Below the pieces are notes generated by a model, which was given only the letters and a program-made list of their open reading frames with translations, was not told the DNA's origin and made no database searches. A DNA stretch of 64,000 nt. Origin: Macrostomum lignano (taxonomy: Eukaryota). How positions within the stretch are numbered: position 1 is the first letter of the stretch; each line of letters starts with the position of its first letter. The stretch covers positions 47,920 through 111,919 of the forward strand of contig NIVC01003202.1 of NCBI GenBank assembly GCA_002269645.1, written 5' to 3'. Shown piece after piece: positions 11,449-46,858 of the stretch. Both the position numbers and the translations under genes were made by a program.

Positions 11449-12213
11449 ACGTACGTCAAATTGTCAACCATGCATTTGCGATCAGCGATCAACTCTAACG
11501 GTAAATTAAAAAAGCAGATGTAAAAACTCTTCATCGGAATTGGCATCCGATTTTATTGCAATAAATTTTCGGGACTTTTCAAACTGAACAATTAATAGCG
11601 TCTCTTCTGTTTCATTTTGTTTATTTAAATCCTGCTAATTAAACACCCGCTTAAGTTGTAGTAATTGATACGGGGATGGGGTTGGCAGCCACTAGAAAAC
11701 CATTTTTAAACATTGCTGGGCAGTTCAGATCAGTTCTTATAGTTTCCTTTTTAGTTTTTGTAGACGCACACTTGTTAGAATTTTGAGCTCCAAGCAATCA
11801 TCGCTCTACCTGAAATTGCAGTAGAGGGGACAGGGTGTGGGAACAAAATGAATTAAAATATCGATTGTAACAAAAATTTCAATGCACCTGCCTTAAACCT
11901 TCATCATTCATTCAAGCTTGTTTACACAATTGCTATTGTGCCACGCCCTAGTTGGAATTCAAAGATAAAATTGTGTTGCAATTACCACAGCTCTTTTTTC
12001 GAACTGCTTTCGAATCAGATTAGCTACGAGGATAGATTAGATTTTAACGCTAGAGTAGTTTATACGACCTCGTGGTTGTTGACACTCCATAGAAACTATG
12101 CAGCACAGTCACTTTAATGAAAAAGGTTCAATTTGAATTTCAAATAGGCCTTTCTAGCTAGGACTTCAAATTAGTCTGTTGAAGGATGTTACTTGACAAG
12201 ATTGGCTTCTTGC

Positions 12214-15200
12214 TTCTCCCCATGAATCCCAGGAGTTGCTCACTCACTTCTTGCCGAAATTCTCCCCATGAATCCCAGGAGTTGCTCAATCACTTCTTGC
12301 CGAAAATCTCCCCGTGAATCCCAGGAGTTGCTCACTCACTTCTTGCCGAAAATCTCCCCATGAATCCCAGGAGTTGCTCACTCACTTCTTGCCGAAATTC
12401 TCCCCATGAATCCCAGGAGTTGCTCACTCACTTCTTGCCGAAATCTCCCCATGAATCCCAGGAGTTGCTCACTCACTTCTTGCCGAAATTCTCCCCATGA
12501 ATCCCAGGAGTTGCTCACTCACTTCTTGCCGAAATTCTCCCCATGAATCCCAGGAGTTGCTCACTCACTTCTTGCCGAAATTCTCCCCGTGAATCCCAGG
12601 AGTTGCTCACTCACTTCTTGCCGAAATTCTCCCCATGAATCCCAGGAGTTGCTCACTCACTTCTTGCCGAAATTCTCCCCATGAATCCCAGGAGTTGCTC
12701 ACTCACTTCTTGCCGAAATTCTCCCCGTGAATCCCAGGAGTTGCTCACTCACTTCTTGCCGAAATTCTCCCCATGAATCCCAGGAGTTGCTCAATAACTT
12801 CTTGCCGAAATTCTCCCCATGAATCCCAGGAGTTGCTCACTTCTTGCCGAAATTCTCCCCGTGAATCCCAGGAGTTGCTCACTCACTTCTTGCCGAAATT
12901 CTCCCCATGAATCCCAGGAGTTGCTCACTCACTTCTTGCCGAAATTCTCCCCATGAATCCCAGGAGTTGCTCACTCACTTCTTGCCGAAATTCTCCCCGT
13001 GAATCCCAGGAGTTGCTCACTCACTTCTTGCCGAAAATCTCCCCGTGAATCCCAGGAGTTGCTCACTCACTTCTTGCCGAAATTCTCCCCGTGAATCCCA
13101 GGAGTTGCTCACTTCTTGCCGAAAATCTCCCCGTGAATCCCAGGAGTTGCTCACTTCTTGCCGAAATTCTCCCCGTGAATCCCAGGAGTTGCTCACTTCT
13201 TGCCGAAATTCTCCCCGTGAATCCCAGGAGTTGCTCACTTCTTGCCGAAATTCTCCCCATGAATCCCAGGAGTTGCTCACTTCTTGCCGAAATTCTCCCC
13301 ATGAATCCCAGGAGTTGCTCACTTCTTGCCGAAATTCTCCCCATGAATCCCAGGAGTTGCTCACTTCTTGCCGAAATTCTCCCCATGAATCCCAGGAGTT
13401 GCTCACTCACTTCTTGCCGAAATTCTCCCCATGAATCCCAGGAGTTGCTCACTTCTTGCCGAAATTCTCCCCGTGAATCCCAGGAGTTGCTCACTCACTT
13501 CTTGCCGAAATTCTCCCCGTGAATCCCAGGAGTTGCTCACTCACTTCTTGCCGAAATCTCCCCATGAATCCCAGGAGTTGCTCACTCACTTCTTGCCGAA
13601 ATTCTCCCCATGAATCCCAGGAGTTGCTCACTCACTTCTTGCCGAAATTCTCCCCATGAATCCCAGGAGTTGCTCACTTCTTGCCGAAATTCTCCCCGTG
13701 AATCCCAGGAGTTGCTCACTTCTTGCCGAAATTCTCCCCATGAATCCCAGGAGTTGCTCACTCACTTCTTGCCGAAATTCTCCCCGTGAATCCCAGGAGT
13801 TGCTCACTCACTTCTTGCCGAAATTCTCCCCATGAATCCCAGGAGTTGCTCACTCACTTCTTGCCGAAATCTCCCCATGAATCCCAGGAGTTGCTCATCA
13901 CTTCTTGCCGAAATTCTCCCCATGAATCCCAGGAGTTGCTCATCACTTCTTGCCGAAATTCTCCCCATGAATCCCAGGAGTTGCTCACTCACTTCTTGCC
14001 GAAATTCTCCCCGTGAATCCCAGGAGTTGCTCACTCACTTCTTGCCGAAATTCTCCCCATGAATCCCAGGAGTTGCTCACTCACTTCTTGCCGAAATTCT
14101 CCCCATGAATCCCAGGAGTTGCTCACTTCTTGCCGAAATTCTCCCCGTGAATCCCAGGAGTTGCTCACTCACTTCTTGCCGAAATTCTCCCCATGAATCC
14201 CAGGAGTTGCTCACTCACTTCTTGCCGAAATTCTCCCCATGAATCCCAGGAGTTGCTCACTTCTTGCCGAAAATCTCCCCGTGAATCCCAGGAGTTGCTC
14301 ACTCACTTCTTGCCGAAATTCTCCCCATGAATCCCAGGAGTTGCTCACTCACTTCTTGCCGAAATCTCCCCATGAATCCCAGGAGTTGCTCATCACTTCT
14401 TGCCGAAATTCTCCCCATGAATCCCAGGAGTTGCTCACTTCTTGCCGAAATTCTCCCCATGAATCCCAGGAGTTGCTCACTTCTTGCCGAAATTCTCCCC
14501 ATGAATCACAGGAGTTGCTCACTTCTTGCCGAAAATCTCCCCATGAATCCCAGGAGTTGCTCACTCACTTCTTGCCGAAATTCTCCCCGTGAATCCCAGG
14601 AGTTGCTCACTCACTTCTTGCCGAAAATCTCCCCATGAATCCCAGGAGTTGCTCACTCACTTCTTGCCGAAATTCTCCCCGTGAATGCCAGGAGTTGCTC
14701 AATCACTTCTTGCCGAAATTCTCCCCGTGAATCCCAGGAGTTGCTCACTCACTTCTTGCCGAAATTCTCCCCGTGAATCCCAGGAGTTGCTCACTTCTTG
14801 CCGAAATCTCCCCATGAATCCCAGGAGTTGCTCACTTCTTGCCGAAATTCTCCCCGTGAATCCCAGGAGTTGCTCACTTCTTGCCGAAATTCTCCCCATG
14901 AATCCCAGGAGTTGCTCACTTCTTGCCGAAATTCTCCCCATGAATCCCAGGAGTTGCTCACTTCTTGCCGAAATTCTCCCCATGAATCCCAGGAGTTGCT
15001 CACTTCTTGCCGAAAATCTCCCCGTGAATCCCAGGAGTTGCTCACTCACTTCTTGCCGAAATCTCCCCATGAATCCCAGGAGTTGCTCACTCACTTCTTG
15101 CCGAAATCTCCCCATGAATCCCAGGAGTTGCTCACTCACTTCTTGCCGAAATTCTCCCCATGAATCCCAGGAGTTGCTCACTTCTTGCCGAAATTCTCCC

Positions 15201-18200
15201 CATGAATCCCAGGAGTTGCTCACTCACTTCTTGCCGAAATTCTCCCCATGAATCCCAGGAGTTGCTCACTCACTTCTTGCCGAAATTCTCCCCGTGAATC
15301 CCAGGAGTTGCTCACTCACTTCTTGCCGAAATTCTCCCCGTGAATCCCAGGAGTTGCTCACTCACTTCTTGCCGAAATTCTCCCCATGAATCCCAGGAGT
15401 TGCTCACTCACTTCTTGCCGAAATTCTCCCCATGAATCCCAGGAGTTGCTCACTCACTTCTTGCCGAAATTCTCCCCATGAATCCCAGGAGTTGCTCACT
15501 CACTTCTTGCCGAAATTCTCCCCGTGAATCCCAGGAGTTGCTCACTTCTTGCCGAAATTCTCCCCATGAATCCCAGGAGTTGCTCACTCACTTCTTGCCG
15601 AAATTCTCCCCGTGAATCCCAGGAGTTGCTCACTCACTTCTTGCCGAAATTCTCCCCATGAATCCCAGGAGTTGCTCACTCACTTCTTGCCGAAATTCTC
15701 CCCATGAATCCCAGGAGTTGCTCACTTCTTGCCGAAATTCTCCCCATGAATCCCAGGAGTTGCTCACTCACTTCTTGCCGAAATTCTCCCCATGAATCCC
15801 AGGAGTTGCTCACTTCTTGCCGAAATTCTCCCCGTGAATCCCAGGAGTTGCTCACTCACTTCTTGCCGAAATTCTCCCCATGAATCCCAGGAGTTGCTCA
15901 CTCACTTCTTGCCGAAATCTCCCCATGAATCCCAGGAGTTGCTCATCACTTCTTGCCGAAATTCTCCCCATGAATCCCAGGAGTTGCTCACTTCTTGCCG
16001 AAAATCTCCCCATGAATCCCAGGAGTTGCTCACTTCTTGCCGAAATTCTCCCCATGAATCCCAGGAGTTGCTCACTTCTTGCCGAAATTCTCCCCATGAA
16101 TCCCAGGAGTTGCTCACTCACTTCTTGCCGAAATTCTCCCCGTGAATCCCAGGAGTTGCTCACTCACTTCTTGCCGAAAATCTCCCCATGAATCCCAGGA
16201 GTTGCTCACTCACTTCTTGCCGAAATTCTCCCCGTGAATCCCAGGAGTTGCTCACTCACTTCTTGCCGAAATTCTCCCCGTGAATCCCAGGAGTTGCTCA
16301 CTCACTTCTTGCCGAAATTCTCCCCGTGAATCCCAGGAGTTGCTCACTTCTTGCCGAAATTCTCCCCATGAATCCCAGGAGTTGCTCACTTCTTGCCGAA
16401 ATTCTCCCCGTGAATCCCAGGAGTTGCTCACTTCTTGCCGAAATTCTCCCCATGAATCCCAGGAGTTGCTCACTTCTTGCCGAAATTCTCCCCATGAATC
16501 CCAGGAGTTGCTCACTTCTTGCCGAAATTCTCCCCATGAATCCCAGGAGTTGCTCACTCACTTCTTGCCGAAATTCTCCCCATGAATCCCAGGAGTTGCT
16601 CACTCACTTCTTGCCGAAATTCTCCCCATGAATCCCAGGAGTTGCTCACTCACTTCTTGCCGAAATTCTCCCCATGAATCCCAGGAGTTGCTCACTTCTT
16701 GCCGAAATTCTCCCCATGAATCCCAGGAGTTGCTCACTCACTTCTTGCCGAAATTCTCCCCATGAATCCCAGGAGTTGCTCACTCACTTCTTGCCGAAAT
16801 TCTCCCCATGAATCCCAGGAGTTGCTCACTTCTTGCCGAAATTCTCCCCATGAATCCCAGGAGTTGCTCACTCACTTCTTGCCGAAATTCTCCCCATGAA
16901 TCCCAGGAGTTGCTCACTCACTTCTTGCCGAAATTCTCCCCATGAATCCCAGGAGTTGCTCACTCACTTCTTGCCGAAATTCTCCCCATGAATCCCAGGA
17001 GTTGCTCACTCACTTCTTGCCGAAATTCTCCCCATGAATCCCAGGAGTTGCTCACTTCTTGCCGAAATTCTCCCCATGAATCCCAGGAGTTGCTCACTCA
17101 CTTCTTGCCGAAATTCTCCCCATGAATCCCAGGAGTTGCTCACTCACTTCTTGCCGAAATTCTCCCCATGAATCCCAGGAGTTGCTCACTCACTTCTTGC
17201 CGAAATTCTCCCCATGAATCCCAGGAGTTGCTCACTCACTTCTTGCCGAAATTCTCCCCATGAATCCCAGGAGTTGCTCACTCACTTCTTGCCGAAATTC
17301 TCCCCATGAATCCCAGGAGTTGCTCACTCACTTCTTGCCGAAATTCTCCCCATGAATCCCAGGAGTTGCTCACTCACTTCTTGCCGAAATTCTCCCCATG
17401 AATCCCAGGAGTTGCTCACTCACTTCTTGCCGAAATTCTCCCCATGAATCCCAGGAGTTGCTCACTCACTTCTTGCCGAAATTCTCCCCATGAATCCCAG
17501 GAGTTGCTCACTTCTTGCCGAAATTCTCCCCATGAATCCCAGGAGTTGCTCACTCACTTCTTGCCGAAATTCTCCCCATGAATCCCAGGAGTTGCTCACT
17601 CACTTCTTGCCGAAATTCTCCCCATGAATCCCAGGAGTTGCTCACTTCTTGCCGAAATTCTCCCCATGAATCCCAGGAGTTGCTCACTTCTTGCCGAAAT
17701 TCTCCCCATGAATCCCAGGAGTTGCTCACTTCTTGCCGAAATTCTCCCCATGAATCCCAGGAGTTGCTCACTCACTTCTTGCCGAAATTCTCCCCATGAA
17801 TCCCAGGAGTTGCTCACTCACTTCTTGCCGAAATTCTCCCCATGAATCCCAGGAGTTGCTCACTCACTTCTTGCCGAAATTCTCCCCATGAATCCCAGGA
17901 GTTGCTCACTCACTTCTTGCCGAAATTCTCCCCATGAATCCCAGGAGTTGCTCACTTCTTGCCGAAATTCTCCCCATGAATCCCAGGAGTTGCTCACTCA
18001 CTTCTTGCCGAAATTCTCCCCATGAATCCCAGGAGTTGCTCACTCACTTCTTGCCGAAATTCTCCCCATGAATCCCAGGAGTTGCTCACTCACTTCTTGC
18101 CGAAATTCTCCCCATGAATCCCAGGAGTTGCTCACTCACTTCTTGCCGAAATTCTCCCCATGAATCCCAGGAGTTGCTCACTTCTTGCCGAAATTCTCCC

Positions 18201-21200
18201 CATGAATCCCAGGAGTTGCTCACTCACTTCTTGCCGAAATTCTCCCCATGAATCCCAGGAGTTGCTCACTTCTTGCCGAAATTCTCCCCATGAATCCCAG
18301 GAGTTGCTCACTTCTTGCCGAAATTCTCCCCATGAATCCCAGGAGTTGCTCACTCACTTCTTGCCGAAATTCTCCCCATGAATCCCAGGAGTTGCTCACT
18401 CACTTCTTGCCGAAATTCTCCCCATGAATCCCAGGAGTTGCTCACTTCTTGCCGAAATTCTCCCCATGAATCCCAGGAGTTGCTCACTCACTTCTTGCCG
18501 AAATTCTCCCCATGAATCCCAGGAGTTGCTCACTCACTTCTTGCCGAAATTCTCCCCATGAATCCCAGGAGTTGCTCACTCACTTCTTGCCGAAATTCTC
18601 CCCATGAATCCCAGGAGTTGCTCACTCACTTCTTGCCGAAATTCTCCCCATGAATCCCAGGAGTTGCTCACTCACTTCTTGCCGAAATTCTCCCCATGAA
18701 TCCCAGGAGTTGCTCACTTCTTGCCGAAATTCTCCCCATGAATCCCAGGAGTTGCTCACTCACTTCTTGCCGAAATTCTCCCCATGAATCCCAGGAGTTG
18801 CTCACTCACTTCTTGCCGAAATTCTCCCCATGAATCCCAGGAGTTGCTCACTCACTTCTTGCCGAAATTCTCCCCATGAATCCCAGGAGTTGCTCACTCA
18901 CTTCTTGCCGAAATTCTCCCCATGAATCCCAGGAGTTGCTCACTCACTTCTTGCCGAAATTCTCCCCATGAATCCCAGGAGTTGCTCACTTCTTGCCGAA
19001 ATTCTCCCCATGAATCCCAGGAGTTGCTCACTCACTTCTTGCCGAAATTCTCCCATGAATCCCAGGAGTTGCTCACTCACTTCTTGCCGAAATTCTCCCC
19101 ATGAATCCCAGGAGTTGCTCACTCACTTCTTGCCGAAATTCTCCCCATGAATCCCAGGAGTTGCTCACTCACTTCTTGCCGAAATTCTCCCCATGAATCC
19201 CAGGAGTTGCTCACTCACTTCTTGCCGAAATTCTCCCCATGAATCCCAGGAGTTGCTCACTCACTTCTTGCCGAAATTCTCCCCATGAATCCCAGGAGTT
19301 GCTCACTCACTCTTGCCGAAATTCTCCCCATGAATCCCAGGAGTTGCTCACTTCTTGCCGAAATTCTCCCCATGAATCCCAGGAGTTGCTCACTCACTTC
19401 TTGCCGAAATTCTCCCCATGAATCCCAGGAGTTGCTCACTCACTTCTTGCCGAAATTCTCCCCATGAATCCCAGGAGTTGCTCACTCACTTCTTGCCGAA
19501 ATTCTCCCCATGAATCCCAGGAGTTGCTCACTCACTTCTTGCCGAAATTCTCCCCATGAATCCCAGGAGTTGCTCACTCACTTCTTGCCGAAATTCTCCC
19601 CATGAATCCCAGGAGTTGCTCACTCACTTCTTGCCGAAATTCTCCCCATGAATCCCAGGAGTTGCTCACTCACTTCTTGCCGAAATTCTCCCCATGAATC
19701 CCAGGAGTTGCTCACTCACTTCTTGCCGAAATTCTCCCCATGAATCCCAGGAGTTGCTCACTCACTTCTTGCCGAAATTCTCCCCATGAATCCCAGGAGT
19801 TGCTCACTCACTTCTTGCCGAAATTCTCCCCATGAATCCCAGGAGTTGCTCACTCACTTCTTGCCGAAATTCTCCCCATGAATCCCAGGAGTTGCTCACT
19901 CACTTCTTGCCGAAATTCTCCCCATGAATCCCAGGAGTTGCTCACTCACTTCTTGCCGAAATTCTCCCCATGAATCCCAGGAGTTGCTCACTTCTTGCCG
20001 AAATTCTCCCCATGAATCCCAGGAGTTGCTCACTTCTTGCCGAAATTCTCCCCATGAATCCCAGGAGTTGCTCACTTCTTGCCGAAATTCTCCCCATGAA
20101 TCCCAGGAGTTGCTCACTCACTTCTTGCCGAAATTCTCCCCATGAATCCCAGGAGTTGCTCACTCACTTCTTGCCGAAATTCTCCCCATGAATCCCAGGA
20201 GTTGCTCACTCACTTCTTGCCGAAATTCTCCCCATGAATCCCAGGAGTTGCTCACTCACTTCTTGCCGAAATTCTCCCCATGAATCCCAGGAGTTGCTCA
20301 CTCACTTCTTGCCGAAATTCTCCCCATGAATCCCAGGAGTTGCTCACTTCTTGCCGAAATTCTCCCCATGAATCCCAGGAGTTGCTCACTTCTTGCCGAA
20401 ATTCTCCCCATGAATCCCAGGAGTTGCTCACTTCTTGCCGAAATTCTCCCCATGAATCCCAGGAGTTGCTCACTTCTTGCCGAAATTCTCCCCATGAATC
20501 CCAGGAGTTGCTCACTTCTTGCCGAAATTCTCCCCATGAATCCCAGGAGTTGCTCACTTCTTGCCGAAATTCTCCCCATGAATCCCAGGAGTTGCTCACT
20601 CACTTCTTGCCGAAATTCTCCCCATGAATCCCAGGAGTTGCTCACTCACTTCTTGCCGAAATTCTCCCCATGAATCCCAGGAGTTGCTCACTCACTTCTT
20701 GCCGAAATTCTCCCCATGAATCCCAGGAGTTGCTCACTTCTTGCCGAAATTCTCCCCATGAATCCCAGGAGTTGCTCACTCACTTCTTGCCGAAATTCTC
20801 CCCATGAATCCCAGGAGTTGCTCACTCACTTCTTGCCGAAATTCTCCCCATGAATCCCAGGAGTTGCTCACTCACTTCTTGCCGAAATTCTCCCCATGAA
20901 TCCCAGGAGTTGCTCACTCACTTCTTGCCGAAATTCTCCCCATGAATCCCAGGAGTTGCTCACTCACTTCTTGCCGAAATTCTCCCCATGAATCCCAGGA
21001 GTTGCTCACTCACTTCTTGCCGAAATTCTCCCCATGAATCCCAGGAGTTGCTCACTCACTTCTTGCCGAAATTCTCCCCATGAATCCCAGGAGTTGCTCA
21101 CTCACTTCTTGCCGAAATTCTCCCCATGAATCCCAGGAGTTGCTCACTCACTTCTTGCCGAAATTCTCCCCATGAATCCCAGGAGTTGCTCACTCACTTC

Positions 21201-24200: not shown

Positions 24201-27200
24201 TCACTCACTTCTTGCCGAAATTCTCCCCATGAATCCCAGGAGTTGCTCACTCACTTCTTGCCGAAATTCTCCCCATGAATCCCAGGAGTTGCTCACTCAC
24301 TTCTTGCCGAAATTCTCCCCATGAATCCCAGGAGTTGCTCACTCACTTCTTGCCGAAATTCTCCCCATGAATCCCAGGAGTTGCTCACTCACTTCTTGCC
24401 GAAATTCTCCCCATGAATCCCAGGAGTTGCTCACTTCTTGCCGAAATTCTCCCCATGAATCCCAGGAGTTGCTCACTCACTTCTTGCCGAAATTCTCCCC
24501 ATGAATCCCAGGAGTTGCTCACTCACTTCTTGCCGAAATTCTCCCCATGAATCCCAGGAGTTGCTCACTTCTTGCCGAAATTCTCCCCATGAATCCCAGG
24601 AGTTGCTCACTTCTTGCCGAAATTCTCCCCATGAATCCCAGGAGTTGCTCACTTCTTGCCGAAATTCTCCCCATGAATCCCAGGAGTTGCTCACTTCTTG
24701 CCGAAATTCTCCCCATGAATCCCAGGAGTTGCTCACTCACTTCTTGCCGAAATTCTCCCCATGAATCCCAGGAGTTGCTCACTTCTTGCCGAAATTCTCC
24801 CCATGAATCCCAGGAGTTGCTCACTCACTTCTTGCCGAAATTCTCCCCATGAATCCCAGGAGTTGCTCACTCACTTCTTGCCGAAATTCTCCCATGAATC
24901 CCAGGAGTTGCTCACTCACTTCTTGCCGAAATTCTCCCCATGAATCCCAGGAGTTGCTCACTCACTTCTTGCCGAAATTCTCCCCATGAATCCCAGGAGT
25001 TGCTCACTCACTCTTGCCGAAATTCTCCCCATGAATCCCAGGAGTTGCTCACTCACTTCTTGCCGAAATTCTCCCCATGAATCCCAGGAGTTGCTCACTC
25101 ACTTCTTGCCGAAATTCTCCCCATGAATCCCAGGAGTTGCTCACTCACTTGCCGAAATTCTCCCCATGAATCCCAGGAGTTGCTCACTCACTTCTTGCCG
25201 AAATTCTCCCATGAATCCCAGGAGTTGCTCACTTCTTGCCGAAATTCTCCCCATGAATCCCAGGAGTTGCTCACTTTCTTGCCGAAATTCTCCCCATGAA
25301 TCCCAGGAGTTGCTCACTCACTTCTTGCCGAAATTCTCCCCATGAATCCCAGGAGTTGCTCACTTCTTGCCGAAATTCTCCCCATGAATCCCAGGAGTTG
25401 CTCACTTCTTGCCGAAATTCTCCCCATGAATCCCAGGAGTTGCTCACTTCTTGCCGAAATTCTCCCCATGAATCCCAGGAGTTGCTCACTTCTTGCCGAA
25501 ATTCTCCCCATGAATCCCAGGAGTTGCTCACTCACTTCTTGCCGAAATTCTCCCCATGAATCCCAGGAGTTGCTCACTCACTTCTTGCCGAAATTCTCCC
25601 CATGAATCCCAGGAGTTGCTCACTCACTTCTTGCCGAAATTCTCCCCATGAATCCCAGGAGTTGCTCACTCACTTCTTGCCGAAATTCTCCCCATGAATC
25701 CCAGGAGTTGCTCACTCACTTCTTGCCGAAATTCTCCCCATGAATCCCAGGAGTTGCTCACTCACTTCTTGCCGAAATTCTCCCCATGAATCCCAGGAGT
25801 TGCTCACTCACTTCTTGCCGAAATTCTCCCCATGAATCCCAGGAGTTGCTCACTCACTTCTTGCCGAAATTCTCCCCATGAATCCCAGGAGTTGCTCACT
25901 CACTTCTTGCCGAAATTCTCCCCATGAATCCCAGGAGTTGCTCACTCACTTCTTGCCGAAATTCTCCCCATGAATCCCAGGAGTTGCTCACTCACTTCTT
26001 GCCGAAATTCTCCCCATGAATCCCAGGAGTTGCTCACTCACTTCTTGCCGAAATTCTCCCCATGAATCCCAGGAGTTGCTCACTCACTTCTTGCCGAAAT
26101 TCTCCCCATGAATCCCAGGAGTTGCTCACTCACTTCTTGCCGAAATTCTCCCCATGAATCCCAGGAGTTGCTCACTCACTCTTGCCGAAATTCTCCCCAT
26201 GAATCCCAGGAGTTGCTCACTCACTTCTTGCCGAAATTCTCCCCATGAATCCCAGGAGTTGCTCACTCACTTCTTGCCGAAATTCTCCCCATGAATCCCA
26301 GGAGTTGCTCACTCACTTCTTGCCGAAATTCTCCCCATGAATCCCAGGAGTTGCTCACTCACTTCTTGCCGAAATTCTCCCCATGAATCCCAGGAGTTGC
26401 TCACTTCTTGCCGAAATTCTCCCCATGAATCCCAGGAGTTGCTCACTTCTTGCCGAAATTCTCCCCATGAATCCCAGGAGTTGCTCACTCACTTCTTGCC
26501 GAAATTCTCCCCATGAATCCCAGGAGTTGCTCACTCACTTCTTGCCGAAATTCTCCCCATGAATCCCAGGAGTTGCTCACTCACTTCTTGCCGAAATTCT
26601 CCCCATGAATCCCAGGAGTTGCTCACTCACTTCTTGCCGAAATTCTCCCCATGAATCCCAGGAGTTGCTCACTCACTTCTTGCCGAAATTCTCCCCATGA
26701 ATCCCAGGAGTTGCTCACTCACTTCTTGCCGAAATTCTCCCCATGAATCCCAGGAGTTGCTCACTTCTTGCCGAAATTCTCCCCATGAATCCCAGGAGTT
26801 GCTCACTTCTTGCCGAAATTCTCCCCATGAATCCCAGGAGTTGCTCACTTCTTGCCGAAATTCTCCCCATGAATCCCAGGAGTTGCTCACTTCTTGCCGA
26901 AATTCTCCCCATGAATCCCAGGAGTTGCTCACTCACTTCTTGCCGAAATTCTCCCCATGAATCCCAGGAGTTGCTCACTCACTTCTTGCCGAAATTCTCC
27001 CCATGAATCCCAGGAGTTGCTCACTCACTTCTTGCCGAAATTCTCCCCATGAATCCCAGGAGTTGCTCACTCACTTCTTGCCGAAATTCTCCCCATGAAT
27101 CCCAGGAGTTGCTCACTCACTTCTTGCCGAAATTCTCCCCATGAATCCCAGGAGTTGCTCACTCACTTCTTGCCGAAATTCTCCCCATGAATCCCAGGAG

Positions 27201-30200
27201 TTGCTCACTCACTTCTTGCCGAAATTCTCCCCATGAATCCCAGGAGTTGCTCACTTCTTGCCGAAATTCTCCCCATGAATCCCAGGAGTTGCTCACTTCT
27301 TGCCGAAATTCTCCCCATGAATCCCAGGAGTTGCTCACTTCTTGCCGAAATTCTCCCCATGAATCCCAGGAGTTGCTCACTCACTTCTTGCCGAAATTCT
27401 CCCCATGAATCCCAGGAGTTGCTCACTCACTTCTTGCCGAAATTCTCCCCATGAATCCCAGGAGTTGCTCACTCACTTCTTGCCGAAATTCTCCCCATGA
27501 ATCCCAGGAGTTGCTCACACTTCTTGCCGAAATTCTCCCCATGAATCCCAGGAGTTGCTCACTCACTTCTTGCCGAAATTCTCCCCATGAATCCCAGGAG
27601 TTGCTCACTCACTTCTTGCCGAAATTCTCCCCATGAATCCCAGGAGTTGCTCACTCACTTCTTGCCGAAATTCTCCCCATGAATCCCAGGAGTTGCTCAC
27701 TCACTTCTTGCCGAAATTCTCCCCATGAATCCCAGGAGTTGCTCACTCACTTCTTGCCGAAATTCTCCCCATGAATCCCAGGAGTTGCTCACTCACTTCT
27801 TGCCGAAATTCTCCCCATGAATCCCAGGAGTTGCTCACTCACTTCTTGCCGAAATTCTCCCCATGAATCCCAGGAGTTGCTCACTTCTTGCCGAAATTCT
27901 CCCCATGAATCCCAGGAGTTGCTCACTTCTTGCCGAAATTCTCCCCATGAATCCCAGGAGTTGCTCACTCACTTCTTGCCGAAATTCTCCCCATGAATCC
28001 CAGGAGTTGCTCACTCACTTCTTGCCGAAATTCTCCCCATGAATCCCAGGAGTTGCTCACTTCTTGCCGAAATTCTCCCCATGAATCCCAGGAGTTGCTC
28101 ACTTCTTGCCGAAATTCTCCCCATGAATCCCAGGAGTTGCTCACTCACTTCTTGCCGAAATTCTCCCCATGAATCCCAGGAGTTGCTCACTCACTTCTTG
28201 CCGAAATTCTCCCCATGAATCCCAGGAGTTGCTCACTCACTTCTTGCCGAAATTCTCCCCATGAATCCCAGGAGTTGCTCACTCACTTCTTGCCGAAATT
28301 CTCCCCATGAATCCCAGGAGTTGCTCACTCACTTCTTGCCGAAATTCTCCCCATGAATCCCAGGAGTTGCTCACTCACTTCTTGCCGAAATTCTCCCCAT
28401 GAATCCCAGGAGTTGCTCACTCACTTCTTGCCGAAATTCTCCCCATGAATCCCAGGAGTTGCTCACTCACTTCTTGCCGAAATTCTCCCCATGAATCCCA
28501 GGAGTTGCTCACTCACTTCTTGCCGAAATTCTCCCCATGAATCCCAGGAGTTGCTCACTCACTTCTTGCCGAAATTCTCCCCATGAATCCCAGGAGTTGC
28601 TCACTCACTTCTTGCCGAAATTCTCCCCATGAATCCCAGGAGTTGCTCACTCACTTCTTGCCGAAATTCTCCCCATGAATCCCAGGAGTTGCTCACTTCT
28701 TGCCGAAATTCTCCCCATGAATCCCAGGAGTTGCTCACTTCTTGCCGAAATTCTCCCCATGAATCCCAGGAGTTGCTCACTCACTTCTTGCCGAAATTCT
28801 CCCCATGAATCCCAGGAGTTGCTCACTCACTTCTTGCCGAAATTCTCCCCATGAATCCCAGGAGTTGCTCACTTCTTGCCGAAATTCTCCCCATGAATCC
28901 CAGGAGTTGCTCACTTCTTGCCGAAATTCTCCCCATGAATCCCAGGAGTTGCTCACTTCTTGCCGAAATTCTCCCCATGAATCCCAGGAGTTGCTCACTC
29001 ACTTCTTGCCGAAATTCTCCCCATGAATCCCAGGAGTTGCTCACTCACTTCTTGCCGAAATTCTCCCCATGAATCCCAGGAGTTGCTCACTCACTTCTTG
29101 CCGAAATTCTCCCCATGAATCCCAGGAGTTGCTCACTCACTTCTTGCCGAAATTCTCCCCATGAATCCCAGGAGTTGCTCACTCACTTCTTGCCGAAATT
29201 CTCCCCATGAATCCCAGGAGTTGCTCACTCACTTCTTGCCGAAATTCTCCCCATGAATCCCAGGAGTTGCTCACTCACTTCTTGCCGAAATTCTCCCCAT
29301 GAATCCCAGGAGTTGCTCACTCACTTCTTGCCGAAATTCTCCCCGTGAATCCCAGGAGTTGCTCACTCACTTCTTGCCGAAATTCTCCCCATGAATCCCA
29401 GGAGTTGCTCACTCACTTCTTGCCGAAATTCTCCCCATGAATCCCAGGAGTTGCTCACTCACTTCTTGCCGAAATTCTCCCCATGAATCCCAGGAGTTGC
29501 TCACTCACTTCTTGCCGAAATTCTCCCCATGAATCCCAGGAGTTGCTCACTCACTTCTTGCCGAAATTCTCCCCATGAATCCCAGGAGTTGCTCACTCAC
29601 TTCTTGCCGAAATTCTCCCCATGAATCCCAGGAGTTGCTCATCACTTCTTGCCGAAATTCTCCCCATGAATCCCAGGAGTTGCTCACTTCTTGCCGAAAT
29701 TCTCCCCATGAATCCCAGGAGTTGCTCACTTCTTGCCGAAATTCTCCCCATGAATCCCAGGAGTTGCTCACTCACTTCTTGCCGAAATTCTCCCCATGAA
29801 TCCCAGGAGTTGCTCACTTTCTTGCCGAAATTCTCCCCATGAATCCCAGGAGTTGCTCACTCACTTCTTGCCGAAATTCTCCCCATGAATCCCAGGAGTT
29901 GCTCACTTTCTTGCCGAAATTCTCCCCATGAATCCCAGGAGTTGCTCACTCACTTCTTGCCGAAATTCTCCCCATGAATCCCAGGAGTTGCTCACTCACT
30001 TCTTGCCGAAATTCTCCCCATGAATCCCAGGAGTTGCTCACTCACTTCTTGCCGAAATTCTCCCCATGAATCCCAGGAGTTGCTCACTTCTTGCCGAAAT
30101 TCTCCCCATGAATCCCAGGAGTTGCTCACTTCTTGCCGAAATTCTCCCCATGAATCCCAGGAGTTGCTCACTCACTTCTTGCCGAAATTCTCCCCATGAA

Positions 30201-33200
30201 TCCCAGGAGTTGCTCACTCACTTCTTGCCGAAATTCTCCCCATGAATCCCAGGAGTTGCTCACTCTTGCCGAAATTCTCCCCATGAATCCCAGGAGTTGC
30301 TCACTTCCAAATGAATCCCAGGAGTTGCTCACTCACTTCTTGCCGAAATTCTCCCCATGAATCCCAGGAGTTGCTCACTTCTTGCCGAAATTCTCCCCAT
30401 GAATCCCAGGAGTTGCTCACTCACTTCTTGCCGAAATTCTCCCCATGAATCCCAGGAGTTGCTCACTCACTTCTTGCCGAAATTCTCCCCATGAATCCCA
30501 GGAGTTGCTCACTCACTTCTTGCCGAAATTCTCCCCATGAATCCCAGGAGTTGCTCACTCACTTCTTGCCGAAATTCTCCCCATGAATCCCAGGAGTTGC
30601 TCACTCACTTCTTGCCGAAATTCTCCCCATGAATCCCAGGAGTTGCTCACTCACTTCTTGCCGAAATTCTCCCCATGAATCCCAGGAGTTGCTCATCACT
30701 TCTTGCCGAAATTCTCCCCATGAATCCCAGGAGTTGCTCACTTCTTGCCGAAATTCTCCCCATGAATCCCAGGAGTTGCTCACTTCTTGCCGAAATTCTC
30801 CCCATGAATCCCAGGAGTTGCTCACTCACTTCTTGCCGAAATTCTCCCCATGAATCCCAGGAGTTGCTCACTTCTTGCCGAAATTCTCCCCATGAATCCC
30901 AGGAGTTGCTCACTTCTTGCCGAAATTCTCCCCATGAATCCCAGGAGTTGCTCACTTCTTGCCGAAATTCTCCCCATGAATCCCAGGAGTTGCTCACTCA
31001 CTTCTTGCCGAAATTCTCCCCATGAATCCCAGGAGTTGCTCACTCACTTCTTGCCGAAATTCTCCCCATGAATCCCAGGAGTTGCTCATCACTTCTTGCC
31101 GAAATTCTCCCCATGAATCCCAGGAGTTGCTCACTTCTTGCCGAAATTCTCCCCATGAATCCCAGGAGTTGCTCACTTCTTGCCGAAATTCTCCCCATGA
31201 ATCCCAGGAGTTGCTCACTCACTTCTTGCCGAAATTCTCCCCATGAATCCCAGGAGTTGCTCACTTCTTGCCGAAATTCTCCCATGAATCCCAGGAGTTG
31301 CTCACTTCTTGCCGAAATTCTCCCCATGAATCCCAGGAGTTGCTCACTTCTTGCCGAAATTCTCCCCATGAATCCCAGGAGTTGCTCACTCACTTCTTGC
31401 CGAAATTCTCCCCATGAATCCCAGGAGTTGCTCACTCACTTCTTGCCGAAATTCTCCCCATGAATCCCAGGAGTTGCTCACTCACTTCTTGCCGAAATTC
31501 TCCCCATGAATCCCAGGAGTTGCTCACTTCTTGCCGAAATTCTCCCCATGAATCCCAGGAGTTGCTCACTTCTTGCCGAAATTCTCCCCATGAATCCCAG
31601 GAGTTGCTCACTTCTTGCCGAAATTCTCCCCATGAATCCCAGGAGTTGCTCACTCACTTCTTGCCGAAATTCTCCCCATGAATCCCAGGAGTTGCTCACT
31701 CACTTCTTGCCGAAATTCTCCCCATGAATCCCAGGAGTTGCTCACTCACTTCTTGCCGAAATTCTCCCATGAATCCCAGGAGTTGCTCACTTCTTGCCGA
31801 AATTCTCCCCATGAATCCCAGGAGTTGCTCACTCACTTCTTGCCGAAATTCTCCCCATGAATCCCAGGAGTTGCTCACTCACTTCTTGCCGAAATTCTCC
31901 CCGTGAATCCCAGGAGTTGCTCACTCACTTCTTGCCGAAATTCTCCCCGTGAATCCCAGGAGTTGCTCACTCACTTCTTGCCGAAATTCTCCCCATGAAT
32001 CCCAGGAGTTGCTCACTCACTTCTTGCCGAAATTCTCCCCGTGAATCCCAGGAGTTGCTCACTCACTTCTTGCCGAAATTCTCCCCATGAATCCCAGGAG
32101 TTGCTCACTCACTTCTTGCCGAAATTCTCCCCATGAATCCCAGGAGTTGCTCACTTCTTGCCGAAATTCTCCCCATGAATCCCAGGAGTTGCTCACTCAC
32201 TTCTTGCCGAAATTCTCCCCGTGAATCCCAGGAGTTGCTCACTCACTTCTTGCCGAAATTCTCCCCATGAATCCCAGGAGTTGCTCACTCACTTCTTGCC
32301 GAAATTCTCCCCATGAATCCCAGGAGTTGCTCACTTCTTGCCGAAATTCTCCCCGTGAATCCCAGGAGTTGCTCACTTCTTGCCGAAATTCTCCCCATGA
32401 ATCCCAGGAGTTGCTCACTCACTTCTTGCCGAAATTCTCCCCATGAATCCCAGGAGTTGCTCACTCACTTCTTGCCGAAATTCTCCCCGTGAATCCCAGG
32501 AGTTGCTCACTCACTTCTTGCCGAAATTCTCCCGTGAATCCCAGGAGTTGCTCACTCACTTCTTGCCGAAATTCTCCCCATGAATCCCAGGAGTTGCTCA
32601 CTCACTTCTTGCCGAAATTCTCCCCATGAATCCCAGGAGTTGCTCACTCACTTCTTGCCGAAATTCTCCCCATGAATCCCAGGAGTTGCTCACACTTCTT
32701 GCCGAAATTCTCCCCATGAATCCCAGGAGTTGCTCACTTCTTGCCGAAATTCTCCCCATGAATCCCAGGAGTTGCTCACTTCTTGCCGAAATTCTCCCCA
32801 TGAATCCCAGGAGTTGCTCACTCACTTCTTGCCGAAATTCTCCCCATGAATCCCAGGAGTTGCTCACTTCTTGCCGAAATTCTCCCCATGAATCCCAGGA
32901 GTTGCTCACTTCTTGCCGAAATTCTCCCCATGAATCCCAGGAGTTGCTCACTTCTTGCCGAAATTCTCCCCATGAATCCCAGGAGTTGCTCACTCACTTC
33001 TTGCCGAAATTCTCCCCATGAATCCCAGGAGTTGCTCACTCACTTCTTGCCGAAATCTCCCCATGAATCCCAGGAGTTGCTCATCACTTCTTGCCGAAAT
33101 TCTCCCCATGAATCCCAGGAGTTGCTCACTTCTTGCCGAAAATCTCCCCATGAATCCCAGGAGTTGCTCACTTCTTGCCGAAAATCTCCCCATGAATCCC

Positions 33201-34514
33201 AGGAGTTGCACACTCACTTCTTGCCGAAATTCTCCCCATGAATCCCAGGAGTTGCTCACTTCTTGCCGAAATTCTCCCCATGAATCCCAGGAGTTGCTCA
33301 CTTCTTGCCGAAATTCTCCCCATGAATCCCAGGAGTTGCTCACTTCTTGCCGAAATTCTCCCCATGAATCCCAGGAGTTGCTCACTCACTTCTTGCCGAA
33401 ATTCTCCCCATGAATCCCAGGAGTTGCTCACTCACTTCTTGCCGAAAATCTCCCCATGAATCCCAGGAGTTGCTCACTCACTTCTTGCCGAAATTCTCCC
33501 CATGAATCCCAGGAGTTGCTCACTTCCTGCCGAAAATCTCCCCATGAATCCCAGGAGTTGCTCACTTCTTGCCGAAATTCTCCCCGTGAATCCCAGGAGT
33601 TGCTCACTTCTTGCCGAAATTCTCCCCATGAATCCCAGGAGTTGCTCACTCACTTCTTGCCGAAATTCTCCCCATGAATCCCAGGAGTTGCTCACTCACT
33701 TCTTGCCGAAATTCTCCCCATGAATCCCAGGAGTTGCTCACTCACTTCTTGCCGAAATTCTCCCCATGAATCCCAGGAGTTGCTCACTTCTTGCCGAAAT
33801 TCTCCCCATGAATCCCAGGAGTTGCTCACTCACTTCTTGCCGAAATTCTCCATGAATCCCAGGAGTTGCTCACTCACTTCTTGCCGAAATTCTCCCCGTG
33901 AATCCCAGGAGTTGCTCACTCACTTCTTGCCGAAATTCTCCCCGTGAATCCCAGGAGTTGCTCACTCACTTCTTGCCGAAATTCTCCCCGTGAATCCCAG
34001 GAGTTGCTCACTCACTTCTTGCCGAAATTCTCCCCGTGAATCCCAGGAGTTGCTCACTCACTTCTTGCCGAAATTCTCCCCATGAATCCCAGGAGTTGCT
34101 CACTCACTTCTTGCCGAAATTCTCCCCATGAATCCCAGGAGTTGCTCACTTCTTGCCGAAATTCTCCCCATGAATCCCAGGAGTTGCTCACTCACTTCTT
34201 GCCGAATTTCCCCGTGAATCCCAGGAGTTGCTCACTCACTTCTTGCCGAAAATCTCCCCATGAATCCCAGGAGTTGCTCACTTCTTGCCGAAATTCTCCC
34301 CGTGAATCCCAGGAGTTGCTCACTTCTTGCCGAAATTCTCCCCGTGAATCCCAGGAGTTGCTCACTTCTTGCCGAAATTCTCCCCATGAATCCCAGGAGT
34401 TGCTCACTCACTTCTTGCCGGAATTCTCCCCATGAATCCCAGGAGTTGCTCACTCACTTCTTGCCGAAATTCTCCCCATGAATCCCAGGAGTTGCTCACT
34501 TCTTGCCGAAATTC
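12214..34514. repeat. 22.3-kb tandem satellite, 46/42-bp monomers (gaatcccaggagttgc[tcac]tcacttcttgccgaaattctccccat), roughly 500 copies
   Basis: Directly visible; long and short monomers differ by one TCAC; copy number estimated from length. Confidence 0.99.
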
Positions 34515-34798
34515 GAGCCAAATCGCAGGCTGCCTCGAAAGCCGCGCTTCTCCTGCTGGGCCTCATCAAATCCAGCGTCTTCGCCTGGCAACTCGCCCAC
34601 CAGCCTGTCCAGTTGGCGCAGTCGAAGAGCGTCGGCGAGCGTCAGCCAGTCGGCCTGATCACCGGCAGCCAGACTCCGGCTAAGCTGATGAGGCTGCCGC
34701 TGTTGGAATCGGCCTGACAGAGGAGAAGTCGGCAGGCAGTTGGCGGCCAGAATCGCGCAGGCCGAAAGCAGTAGAAAGGCGGCAAGCAGTCGGGGCAT
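34496..34798 (-). CDS. Neuropeptide precursor (100 aa); predicted mature amidated peptide GFRGSLRFGSNF-NH2
   Basis: ATG at 34798 (gcgccATG); signal peptide MPRLLAAFLLLSACAILA; acidic/helical pro-region; KR cleavage site, 12-mer, then Gly-Lys-Lys-stop amidation/cleavage signal; acceptor ttctgcag 13 nt before the ATG. Confidence 0.85.
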   Translation of the reverse strand: MPRLLAAFLLLSACAILAANCLPTSPLSGRFQQRQPHQLSRSLAAGDQADWLTLADALRLRQLDRLVGELPGEDAGFDEAQQEKRGFRGSLRFGSNFGKK

Positions 34799-35414
34799 GG
34801 CGCGACCTGGGCTGCAGAAGGTTCGAGAGGCAGTGCGGCGATGGTAAGTGACTGAAATCTGAATTACCGGCAGGAGAGAGCACAATGCGCTGCTTTTTCG
34901 CTAATGAAACCAACAGAGTGTAGCTGGAAAATGCTTTTAACGACAAGCTCTCGAATAGCTTTTTTGTTTTAACGACTACAATGCTTTAAAAATCTCTTCT
35001 GCTTTGAGAGCGATTTTTTGTTGCTGCTTTATTGTCTTTTTTGCTTCCTCCGAATGCATTTTTAGCAAACACTCGAGACTAAGGCGCGCAGACACGGACT
35101 GAGGGACCTGAAAAAAGAGAGGCAGGCTTCGCAAAATTGGCAGAAGCCGCCTCCGTGCATTTTTGATTGAATTCCGTAGCAGTCAGTCAAAAAATTTCTT
35201 AGCTTGATTATTCCCTAACAAGAGAAATCTATTTCGATGCGATAGAAAATATTTGCCTGATCAATATATCTGGTATTATCACAGACAGTGGCATCACCGC
35301 TGGGGGGGGGCAGGGGGGACATGTCCCCCCAGTGTAGAAGCTACGGAGGGACATGCCAATGCTTTGTCCCCCCCACCCTGTCACCCGTTGTGGAAATCAA
35401 TAATTTTGCTTTAG

Positions 35415-35880
35415 GGCGCCAAAATATAGCGCCTTCGGCGCCAAAATGAGTGTCCGTCTGCGGCGCCAAAATGAGTGTCTGTCTGTGGCGCCAAAATGGG
35501 TGCCTCCGGCGCCAAGATGGGTGCCTGCGGCGCCAAAATGGGTGCCTGCGGCGCCAAAATGGGTGCCTGCAGCGCCAAAATGGGTGCCTGCGGCGCCAAG
35601 ATGGGTGCCTGCGGCGCCAAAATGGGTGCCTGCGGCGCCAAAATGGGTGCCTGCGGCGCCAAAATGGGTGCCTGCGGCGCCAAAATGGGTGCCTGCGGCG
35701 CCAAAATGGGTGCCTGCGGCGCCAAAATGGGTGCCTCCGGCGCCAAGATGGGTGCCTGCGGCGCCAAAATGGGTGCCTGCGGCGCCAAAATGGGTGCCTG
35801 CGGCGCCAAAATGGGTGCCTGCGGCGCCAAAATGGGTGCCTGCGGCGCCAAAATGAGTGCCTGCGGCGCCAAAATGAGTG
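35415..35880. repeat. 21-bp minisatellite (ggcgccaaaatgggtgcctgc)
   Basis: Tandem copies; source of six-frame periodic ORFs. Confidence 0.97.

Positions 35881-46339: not shown

Positions 46340-46858
<519 letters not shown>

What the first reader, a model, noticed from the sequence alone, without database searches (positions are those of the whole stretch)
11809..34798. A 22-kb satellite born from the last codons of a neuropeptide gene, possibly forming an intron whose removal regenerates the same C-terminus
Seen: the precursor ends ...GGC TCG AAT TTC GGC AAG AAG TGA GCA ACT CCT GGG ATT CAT GGG GAG, and from AAT onward this is the satellite monomer. Every one of roughly 500 units therefore repeats the amidation signal and stop (N-F-G-K-K-*). 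The same bases overlap a donor-like site (AAG AA|GTGAG). Beyond the array is a strong acceptor (ccctgtcccctctactgcaatttcag|G TAG at 11810/11809), followed by AATAAA at 11620-11625 and 11552-11557. Joining the donor at 34500 to this acceptor gives AAG AA+G TAG, i.e. K-K-stop again. The far array end (gggag-aagcaagaag) shows microhomology to the unit start, consistent with origin by local duplication. Inference: the array is an exon/intron-junction amplification inside a 22.7-kb terminal intron, and spliced and unspliced readings encode the same peptide.
Basis: partly seen in the sequence, partly recalled or inferred. Interest (0 to 1): 0.8.

Follow-up and report, generated by a model that had tools for sequence, protein, structure and literature searches.

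The report
Giant minisatellite spanning an exon–intron junction
In one of three copies of a small flatworm (Macrostomum lignano) peptide-hormone gene, the last five codons plus the start of the final intron have been copied head-to-tail 499 times (22 kb); public gene models splice the whole array out, so this is an unusually large example of a repeat type already known from human genes, not a new kind of element.

Summary
Window 34513..12216 (minus strand) holds 499 head-to-tail units of 46 or 42 bp. The first unit consists of the last 15 coding bases (N-F-G-K-K) of a 100-aa secreted precursor plus the first 27 intron bases.

456 of 499 units keep NFGKK-stop, and 472 of 499 keep the donor AAGAA|GTGAG.

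The window is Macrostomum lignano contig NIVC01003202.1. The deposited, RNA-seq-guided CDS runs from ATG 34798 to TAG 11806.

Two homeologous copies have the same boundaries and the same join but only 49 and 50 units.

Intron retention, use of any pseudo-donor, or an alternative acceptor 4 nt downstream all leave the mature peptide GFRGSLRFGSNF-amide unchanged.

The class is known: minisatellites whose first monomer spans an exon–intron boundary occur in human F7, IFI6, CBS, LMNB2 and PDGF. What is new here is the scale, the position at the stop codon, and the tenfold difference between homeologs.

No junction reads could be inspected. The array length rests on a single assembly. The precursor has no detectable homologues.

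Most likely this is a neutral, tolerated repeat expansion. Interest is moderate.

The parts
36074..36258 (-). Exon 1 (5' UTR). The 5' end is approximate. The donor is catcg|gtgagt at 36074|36073. This copy has an in-frame TAG, so the CDS starts at the ATG in exon 2.
   Evidence: The partial products P0001 and P0003 read through the equivalent exon in L002 and L003. The window translation shows the stop.
34812..36073 (-). Intron 1. It contains a 21-bp minisatellite at 35415-35884.
34500..34811 (-). Exon 2. The CDS starts at ATG 34798. It encodes a signal-peptide-like N-terminus, then KR-GFRGSLRFGSNF-G-KK. The last Lys codon is split after its second base (phase-2 intron).
34494..34502 (-). Authentic 5' splice site GAA|GTGAGC, cut at 34500|34499. 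Bases 34498-34496 are the in-frame TGA that is read if the intron is retained.
   Evidence: The deposited CDS requires this donor.
12216..34513 (-). Minisatellite of 499 units (319 of 46 bp, 141 of 42 bp). Unit 1 consists of the last 15 exon bases plus the first 27 intron bases. It holds 472 donor copies and 456 NFGKK-stop copies. The core is homogenised and the edges are diverse.
12206..12215 (-). AAGCAAGAAG: either a truncated terminal unit or ancestral microhomology at the distal array junction. It is identical in all three gene copies.
11810..12205 (-). Unique 3' part of intron 2. It ends in a pyrimidine tract and cag. A single ATTAAA lies at 12118-12113. The whole 22,690-nt intron has no AATAAA on the sense strand.
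11806..11809 (-). G + TAG: the last base of the Lys codon and the stop codon of the deposited CDS. A second acceptor, tag|A (11806|11805), gives the UniProt model that ends KKAMIAWSSKF.
11530..11805 (-). Rest of exon 3 (3' UTR), with AATAAA at 11625-11620 and 11557-11552. The 3' end is approximate. Markers specific to this copy are T at 11768 and a TA insertion about 11741.

Best explanation
This is a minisatellite (VNTR) whose first monomer spans the exon 2 / intron 2 boundary of Mlig017077. That gene is a three-exon Macrostomum lignano gene for a small secreted precursor with one C-terminal amidated peptide.

**Origin (inferred).** A 42-bp segment, made of the last 15 exon bases plus the first 27 intron bases, was duplicated locally before the three homeologous copies diverged. 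The array then changed length by unequal exchange or slippage. It stayed at about 50 units in two homeologs and grew to 499 units (22.3 kb) in this one, which has a homogenised core.

**Splicing (shown by deposited models).** The array lies inside the terminal intron. The pre-mRNA is spliced from the most upstream donor (34500|34499) to the acceptor at 11810|11809.

**Why it is tolerated (inferred).** The intron is phase 2 and begins GTGAG. Exon 3 contributes only G + TAG. As a result, retention, use of any pseudo-donor, or use of the acceptor 4 nt downstream all yield the same mature peptide. Selection therefore does not act on array length through the protein, and the array could expand neutrally in a genome where tandem repeats are very common.
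For: - **Array anatomy and boundary inside the CDS:**
- **Same two boundaries in three syntenic copies:** unit counts are 499, 49 and 50. The upstream flanks are 99% identical and the proteins are identical.
- **Homogenised core, diverse edges:** 0-8% variant units in the core against about 45-50% at the edges. Some variant types are shared with the short arrays.
- **Deposited CDS ranges:** all end at cag|G TAG in the three copies, and my exon reconstruction reproduces PAA82775.1.
- **Independent model:** UniProt A0A1I8JLI3 uses the same donor with an acceptor 4 nt downstream.
- **Annotation method and genome background:** the annotation is RNA-seq and transcript based, and simple and tandem repeats make up 15% of the genome (PMC5730564).
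- **Three gene copies are expected:** the assembly holds three homeologous subgenomes (PMC10733133).
- **No poly(A) signal:** the intron has no AATAAA on the sense strand.
- **All splice outcomes give the same peptide:**
- **No sign of constraint within units:** variation sits at a few positions, namely the GTGA indel, one CpG site, and G-to-T at donor position +5.
- **No extra RNA features:** no special RNA fold (z = +0.41) and no Rfam match.
- **Precedent:** human minisatellites whose first monomer spans an exon–intron boundary, in which the most upstream donor is chosen (PMC1557585).
Against: - No RNA reads were inspected. Junction reads are nearly identical between the three copies, so support for splicing across 22.7 kb in this particular copy may come from multi-mapping reads.
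- The 22.3-kb length rests on one long-read assembly that later work describes as partly chimeric.
- 329 pseudo-donors (GTGAGT) match the donor consensus better than the authentic GTGAGC. Exclusive use of the first site is therefore not self-evident.
- There is no outgroup, so the direction of origin and neutrality are both inferences.
- The 22.7-kb intron is about 16-20 times the mean intron length in this genome.
Confidence: 0.75

Rival explanations
1. The expanded copy is not what is expressed, or the array length is an assembly artefact. Real transcripts would come from the two 49-50-unit homeologs (intron about 2.6 kb). The 22.7-kb intron model in this window would then exist only because identical junction reads multi-map.
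For: - Exon 2 differs between copies at only two synonymous sites. Exon 3 differs at a few positions.
- Two of the three copies have short arrays with nearly the same unit order.
- 36% of the assembly length lies in chimeric scaffolds, and multi-mapping bias is documented (PMC10733133).
- The mean intron is 1.1-1.4 kb.
Against: - The array shows no multi-kb exact self-duplication of the kind expected from assembler looping. The longest informative shared block is 12 units.
- It has the edge/core structure of a natural array.
- The promoter region, splice sites and CDS of this copy are intact.
- Other arrays in the window also differ 2-3 fold between copies.
Confidence: 0.2
2. The array arose in a 3' UTR and the intron came later. 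The ancestral gene would have ended at AAG AAG TGA with a short 3' UTR. The array grew in that UTR, the GTGAG donor is a by-product of 'G TGA G', and splicing to a downstream acceptor arose or was recruited secondarily.
For: - The TGA directly follows KK.
- Exon 3 contributes no amino acid.
- Two acceptors 4 nt apart are both used in public models, and both leave the mature peptide unchanged.
- An ATTAAA lies about 100 nt after the array end, at 12118. It could have served an ancestral UTR of about 150 nt.
Against: - All three copies conserve a strong pyrimidine tract and the acceptor, with a TAG directly behind it.
- All deposited models are spliced.
- A single ATTAAA in about 400 AT-rich bases is not unlikely by chance.
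Confidence: 0.15
3. The monomer is a pre-existing, genome-wide satellite that landed next to the gene. The gene's amidation signal and stop codon would then be derived from the repeat.
For: - Tandem repeats make up 15% of the genome and 58% of this window.
- The whole genome could not be scanned for the monomer.
Against: - The core of the unit is absent outside the array in the 64-kb window and in 2 x 24 kb of homeologous sequence, even allowing up to 5 errors.
- Translated units match nothing among 5.8 billion proteins.
- Each of the more than 25 other arrays in the window has its own unrelated unit.
- The proximal boundary falls exactly where the sequence stops being unique CDS. The distal junction carries a partial unit, as expected for an in-situ duplication.
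Confidence: 0.05
4. The array is functional. About 470 U1-binding donor copies and 22 kb of G-rich transcript could tune the output of this homeolog. Possible routes are transcriptional delay, pseudo-donor use producing isoforms sensitive to nonsense-mediated decay, or protection from premature polyadenylation.
For: - 329 pseudo-donors are closer to consensus than the authentic site.
- Donors from unit 3 onward would put the exon junction more than 55 nt downstream of the stop codon.
- Strand GC skew across the array is strong, about 0.37 in magnitude.
- Length differs tenfold between homeologs.
Against: - The distribution of unit variants shows no constraint.
- No RNA structure.
- Comparable arrays are common throughout this genome.
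- In the human F7 precedent the pseudo-sites stay silent.
Confidence: 0.1

Closest known systems
Human F7 intron 7 37-bp VNTR (Borensztajn et al. 2006, PMC1557585)
   Same: - The first monomer spans the exon–intron boundary.
- The authentic 5' splice site is therefore followed by a series of identical pseudo-sites competing for one acceptor.
- The most upstream site is the one used.
- Copy number is variable.
   Different: - F7 has 5-9 repeats; this locus has 49-499.
- The F7 monomer contains 4 exon bases; this one contains 15.
- The F7 array follows an internal exon; this one follows the last coding exon, so each unit also repeats the amidation/cleavage signal and a stop codon.
- Most pseudo-sites here are closer to consensus than the authentic site.
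- Here the length variants sit in homeologs within one genome, not in population alleles.
- F7 donor choice was tested experimentally; donor choice here was not.
Human IFI6 (6-16), CBS intron 13, LMNB2 and PDGF intron 4 boundary-spanning minisatellites (as summarised in PMC1557585)
   Same: - All are tandem arrays that reiterate a splice donor at an exon–intron boundary.
- In LMNB2 and PDGF only the authentic donor is used.
   Different: - Those arrays have 10-26 units.
- In IFI6 and CBS the two nearest pseudo-sites are also used and change the protein.
- Here pseudo-site use could not change the peptide.
Invertebrate amidated neuropeptide precursors (signal peptide, dibasic sites, C-terminal Gly)
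   Same: - An N-terminal hydrophobic signal-like segment.
- The layout KR-peptide-G-KK at the C-terminus.
- A short, single-peptide precursor.
   Different: - No sequence relative outside M. lignano, no Pfam family, and no expression or peptide data seen here.
- The UniProt name 'Preprosomatostatin' is not supported.

Membership tests
Minisatellite whose first monomer spans an exon–intron boundary (F7 IVS7 type) | Head-to-tail array of 10-100-bp units | tested here: met
   Period 46/42 bp, 499 units, 96% matches.
Minisatellite whose first monomer spans an exon–intron boundary (F7 IVS7 type) | The first monomer contains the end of the exon and the authentic 5' splice site | tested here: met
   Unit 1 is the last 15 coding bases plus GTGAGC.... 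The same holds in L002 and L003.
Minisatellite whose first monomer spans an exon–intron boundary (F7 IVS7 type) | The donor sequence is reiterated in the intron as pseudo-sites | tested here: met
   472 of 499 units keep AAGAA|GTGAG.
Minisatellite whose first monomer spans an exon–intron boundary (F7 IVS7 type) | The array is removed as part of an intron, using the most upstream donor | tested here: met
   This is indirect evidence. Deposited transcript-based CDS ranges end at cag|G TAG in three copies, and the exon reconstruction reproduces the deposited protein. Reads themselves were not available.
Minisatellite whose first monomer spans an exon–intron boundary (F7 IVS7 type) | Downstream pseudo-sites are silent | not testable with these tools
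   This needs RNA-seq or Iso-Seq junction counts.
Minisatellite whose first monomer spans an exon–intron boundary (F7 IVS7 type) | Variable copy number | tested here: met
   499, 49 and 50 units in the three homeologous copies. Population alleles were not tested.
Amidated neuropeptide precursor | Signal peptide, dibasic cleavage sites flanking the peptide, and a C-terminal Gly before the basic pair | tested here: met
   Read directly from the sequence: MPRLLAAFLLLSACAILAANC..., then ...EKR-GFRGSLRFGSNF-G-KK. No signal-peptide predictor was available.
Amidated neuropeptide precursor | Homology to a described peptide family | tested here: not met
   Only the M. lignano cluster itself was found. 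No Pfam family at E up to 10. The exhaustive HMMER search gave only two hits to long proteins with several short matched stretches, which I take to be repetitive sequence and did not inspect further. The peptide string appears in no paper.
Amidated neuropeptide precursor | Neuronal expression and a detected mature peptide | not testable with these tools
   This needs in situ hybridisation and mass spectrometry. The calculated monoisotopic mass of the amidated peptide is 1342.69 Da.
Somatostatin / allatostatin-C type precursor (UniProt name of A0A1I8JLI3) | Somatostatin family signature and a disulfide-bonded peptide with two Cys | tested here: not met
   No Pfam hit. The predicted peptide has no Cys.
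Dispersed or genome-wide satellite DNA | The same monomer occurs at many unrelated loci | tested here: inconclusive
   The monomer is absent outside the array in the window and both homeologous loci. There are no protein-level hits and no metagenome hits. The M. lignano genome as a whole could not be scanned.

The most novel reading that the evidence does not exclude
Array length acts as a switch between homeologs. In the 499-unit copy, hundreds of donors that are equal to or stronger than the authentic one, together with 22 kb of G-rich repeat, would divert or delay splicing. This could work through pseudo-donor use giving long-3'UTR isoforms prone to nonsense-mediated decay, or through slow or aborted transcription. 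Repeat expansion at the exon–intron junction would then be silencing one of three neuropeptide gene copies after the recent whole-genome duplication. If instead the first donor is still chosen faithfully, that would show 5'-to-3' 'first-site' donor selection operating over about 470 competitors in an invertebrate.
Probability: 0.12. Interest if true: 0.6.

Novelty: new member of a known kind. Interest (0 to 1): 0.35.

Why it matters
**A natural test of donor choice.** One authentic 5' splice site is followed by about 470 copies of itself, most of them slightly better matches to consensus, and all compete for a single acceptor. The protein outcome is buffered, so the array is free to vary.

**A built-in comparison.** Three homeologs in one inbred animal carry 49, 50 and 499 units. 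RNA-seq with copy-specific SNPs could therefore show how array length affects donor choice, intron removal and expression.

**How fast these repeats change.** The flanks differ by only about 1%, yet the array length differs tenfold. This shows how quickly minisatellites remodel genes after the recent genome duplication in M. lignano.

**A caution for annotation.** The array and its neighbours create many spurious ORFs of 110-550 aa. One public name for the gene product, 'Preprosomatostatin', is unsupported.

Tried and rejected
- **Homologues of the precursor.** The word-indexed search found only its own cluster. Pfam gave nothing at E up to 10. The exhaustive HMMER search over 1.84 billion representatives gave two hits to long proteins with several short matched stretches, which I take to be spurious. 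The peptide family therefore stays unassigned.
- **'Preprosomatostatin' label.** Rejected.
- **Monomer elsewhere.**
  - The translated units, both strands concatenated, gave no hit among 5.8 billion proteins.
  - An exact 29-mer found nothing in JGI metagenome contigs.
  - An approximate search found nothing outside the array in the window, L002 or L003.
  - None of these is a scan of the M. lignano genome.
- **RNA structure.** The first 200 nt around the junction folds no better than shuffled sequence (z = +0.41). There are no Rfam families anywhere in the window.
- **Selection on units.** The per-position variation shows no constraint or decay specific to the donor or coding part, beyond slippage-prone and CpG sites.
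- **Simple slippage between the two GCAAGAAG copies as the founding event.** This would predict a 37-bp unit, not 42 bp. The distal AAGCAAGAAG may therefore just be a truncated unit (my reasoning).
- **Literature.** No paper holds the gene id or the peptide string. The Koziol et al. 2016 flatworm neuropeptide paper is not in the library.
- **Subgenome assignment.** I tried to assign the three copies to the S, L1 and L2 subgenomes from flank identities. The result was inconsistent and I left it open.

Full report
**What is in the sequence.** Tandem Repeats Finder reports one array at window 12214..34514 with period 46, 498 copies, 96% matches and score 37,661. I parsed it unit by unit on the minus strand, which is the sense strand of the gene. 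This gives 499 units between 34513 and 12216, 22,298 bp in total.
- 319 units are 46 bp (AATTTCGGCAAGAAGTGAGTGAGCAACTCCTGGGATTCATGGGGAG).
- 141 units are 42 bp and lack one GTGA.
- The remaining 39 units are other lengths: 38 differ from these by 1-2-nt indels and one is a 28-bp partial unit.

Just upstream lies an ORF that starts at ATG 34798. It encodes MPRLLAAFLLLSACAILAANCLPTSP...EKRGFRGSLRFGSNFGKK and has a TGA at 34498-34496. The first array unit begins at the AAT (Asn) codon, so it consists of the last 15 coding bases plus 27 downstream bases.

456 of 499 units keep the full NFGKK-stop string. 472 keep AAGAA|GTGAG, 329 as GTGAGT and 143 as GTGAGC.

**Where the window comes from, and what is already annotated.** An exact look-up of the 100-aa protein identifies the window as Macrostomum lignano, assembly GCA_002269645.1 (Mlig_3_7), contig NIVC01003202.1. 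The deposited 100-residue product covers 22,993 bp, which maps to window 34798..11806. That range runs from the ATG to the TAG that follows the proposed acceptor by one base.

A CDS that ends at this TAG can only be continuous if the donor in unit 1 (34500|34499) is used. Any later donor would leave the unit-1 TGA in frame.

The same protein cluster contains two further genomic copies: Mlig017077g3 on NIVC01000452.1 (L002) and Mlig017077g1 on NIVC01002080.1 (L003). Their deposited ranges also end at cag|G TAG. Their 'partial' products begin with a translated 5' UTR exon. Joining exon 1, exon 2 and 'G TAG' in L002 reproduces PAA82775.1 exactly.

In the window copy, exon 1 carries an in-frame TAG. 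This explains why its CDS is recorded as complete at 100 aa.

A fourth, independent model (UniProt A0A1I8JLI3, 109 aa) ends ...GKKAMIAWSSKF. This is the product of the same donor joined to a second acceptor 4 nt downstream, tag|A.

The Mlig_3_7 annotation was built from RNA-seq (STAR, StringTie, TACO) and mapped de novo transcripts (PMC5730564). These joins therefore reflect transcript evidence, although I could not inspect reads.

**Gene anatomy.**
- Exon 1 runs from about 36258 to 36074 and is 5' UTR.
- Intron 1 runs from 36073 to 34812 and contains a 21-bp minisatellite.
- Exon 2 runs from 34811 to 34500.
- Intron 2 runs from 34499 to 11810 and is 22,690 nt. Of this, 22,284 nt are array and 406 nt are unique.
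- Exon 3 starts at 11809 and ends near 11600 or 11530.

Intron 2 has no AATAAA on the sense strand and a single ATTAAA at 12118. The mean intron in this genome is 1.1-1.4 kb, so intron 2 is a strong outlier.

**All readings give the same peptide.** Four cases were translated:
- splicing to acceptor 1 gives ...GKK-TAG;
- intron retention gives ...GKK-TGA;
- use of any pseudo-donor leaves the unit-1 TGA in frame;
- acceptor 2 adds nine residues after the KK cleavage site.

This follows from two simple facts: the intron is phase 2 and begins GTGAG (AA|G TGA G), and exon 3 supplies only G + TAG. The mature product predicted by standard prohormone processing (established knowledge) is GFRGSLRFGSNF-amide in every case. 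Donors from unit 3 onward would place the exon junction more than 55 nt downstream of the stop codon. In vertebrates this marks a transcript for nonsense-mediated decay; whether the same holds in flatworms is unknown to me.

**Comparison of the three copies.** L002 and L003 are syntenic with the window.
- The 850 bp upstream of the array are 99.1-99.4% identical. The coding sequences differ at two synonymous sites in total, and the proteins are identical.
- Both array boundaries are the same in all three copies. These are GGCTCG|AATTTC... proximally and ...GGGGAG|AAGCAAGAAGCC distally.
- L002 has 49 units and L003 about 50, in nearly the same order of variant units.
- The first unit is the 42-bp type in all three copies.

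The window array has diverse edges: 23 of the first 50 units and 48 of the last 99 are not one of the two main types. Its core is homogenised, with 0-6 variant units per 50. This is the usual signature of expansion by unequal exchange.

The array therefore predates the divergence of the copies and grew about tenfold in this one. M. lignano is a recent hidden polyploid whose assembly holds three homeologous subgenomes that differ by about 1.4-2.4% in SNPs (PMC10733133). That accounts for the three copies.

Other arrays in the window also differ between copies. (TCTG)n has 123 copies against 362; the 22-bp array has 138 against 68; the 27-bp array has 60 against 22. Tandem arrays cover 58% of this window, or 36% without the main array.

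**Is the monomer private to this locus?** The 27-nt core of the unit is absent outside the array in the window, L002 and L003, even with up to five errors allowed. Translated units match nothing among 5.8 billion proteins. An exact 29-mer is absent from JGI metagenome contigs. Each of the other arrays in the window has its own unrelated unit. This argues against a dispersed satellite, but the M. lignano genome itself could not be scanned.

**Is there anything beyond a neutral repeat?**
- Variation among units is concentrated at the GTGA indel, an A/T at unit position 2, a CpG site (CACGG/CATGG) and a G-to-T at donor position +5. No pattern suggests selection for or against the donor or coding part.
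- The junction region folds no better than shuffled sequence (z = +0.41).
- Rfam finds nothing in the window.
- The precursor has no detectable relatives, and the 'Preprosomatostatin' name is unsupported. 'Neuropeptide precursor' therefore rests only on its signal-like N-terminus and the KR...G-KK layout.

**Comparison with what is known.** Minisatellites whose first monomer spans an exon–intron boundary, so that the authentic donor is followed by identical pseudo-sites, are described for several human genes (PMC1557585):
- F7 intron 7 (37 bp, 5-9 copies);
- IFI6/6-16 (25 pseudo-sites);
- CBS intron 13;
- LMNB2;
- PDGF intron 4.

In F7 only the most upstream site is used. Pseudo-sites with higher U1 complementarity do not compete unless they match the consensus perfectly.

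The present locus meets the structural criteria of this class, and through the deposited models it meets the 'most upstream donor' criterion as well. It differs in four ways:
- scale (49-499 units);
- position at the stop codon of the last coding exon;
- most pseudo-sites being one consensus match better than the authentic site at position +6;
- the length variants sitting in homeologs of one genome.

**Verdict.** The object is a new and extreme member of a known kind of repeat, most likely a neutral expansion that is tolerated because the peptide is buffered against every splicing outcome.

Open points are direct junction reads for this copy, the true array length, pseudo-donor usage, and the direction of origin. 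The array may have arisen in an existing intron, or in a 3' UTR that later became an intron.

Noticed in passing
window, whole; e.g. 46340-46830, 41720-44675, 36552-38133, 35415-35884: About 27 separate tandem arrays cover 58% of the window, or 36% without the main array. Each has its own unit. Copy numbers differ 2-3 fold from the homeologous loci: (TCTG)n 123 against 362, the 22-bp array 138 against 68, the 27-bp array 60 against 22.
   Followed up: partly
window 36211-36240 (minus strand, exon 1): Relative to g1 and g3, this copy has an indel in the 5' UTR exon that creates an in-frame TAG. This is why its CDS is deposited as complete (100 aa), while the other two are 'partial' and read through the UTR.
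   Followed up: yes
window 11805-11810: There are two acceptors 4 nt apart, cag|G and tag|A. Two public protein models differ only by which one they use: 100 aa against 109 aa ending KKAMIAWSSKF. In L003 the bases after the TAG differ (ATT in place of AGC), so the 9-aa extension is not conserved.
   Followed up: yes
UniProt A0A1I8JLI3 (P0004): The public name 'Preprosomatostatin' has no support. There is no Pfam match, no similarity to human preprosomatostatin, and no Cys in the predicted peptide.
   Followed up: yes
window 50856-52007 (-) and 57111-57743 (-): These are large exon-like ORFs from neighbouring genes. One matches the Major Facilitator Superfamily (MFS_1, E = 6.5e-26). The other is a C-terminal fragment of a secretin-family 7TM receptor (7tm_2, E = 2.4e-5).
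   Followed up: partly
window 12216-34513, 35341-35952, 36487-38159, 41570-42472, 45049-45756, 61449-62280: Tandem arrays generate many long spurious ORFs on both strands, from 110 to 549 aa. In the 42-bp units of the main array, two of the three sense frames are open. This is a hazard for ORF-based annotation.
   Followed up: no
window 8678-9016 (-) and 5208-5699 (-): These ORFs have Cys/Trp-rich motifs such as CEWSEWQC and WCSWQSWQSW, reminiscent of thrombospondin type 1 repeats. They have no Pfam match at E up to 0.01. They probably belong to the 403- and 405-aa genes called downstream in L002.
   Followed up: no
window 12001-34000: Strand GC skew across the array is about -0.37 on the plus strand, so the transcribed sense strand is G-rich with two G-runs per unit. 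I did not test whether this promotes R-loops or array instability.
   Followed up: no
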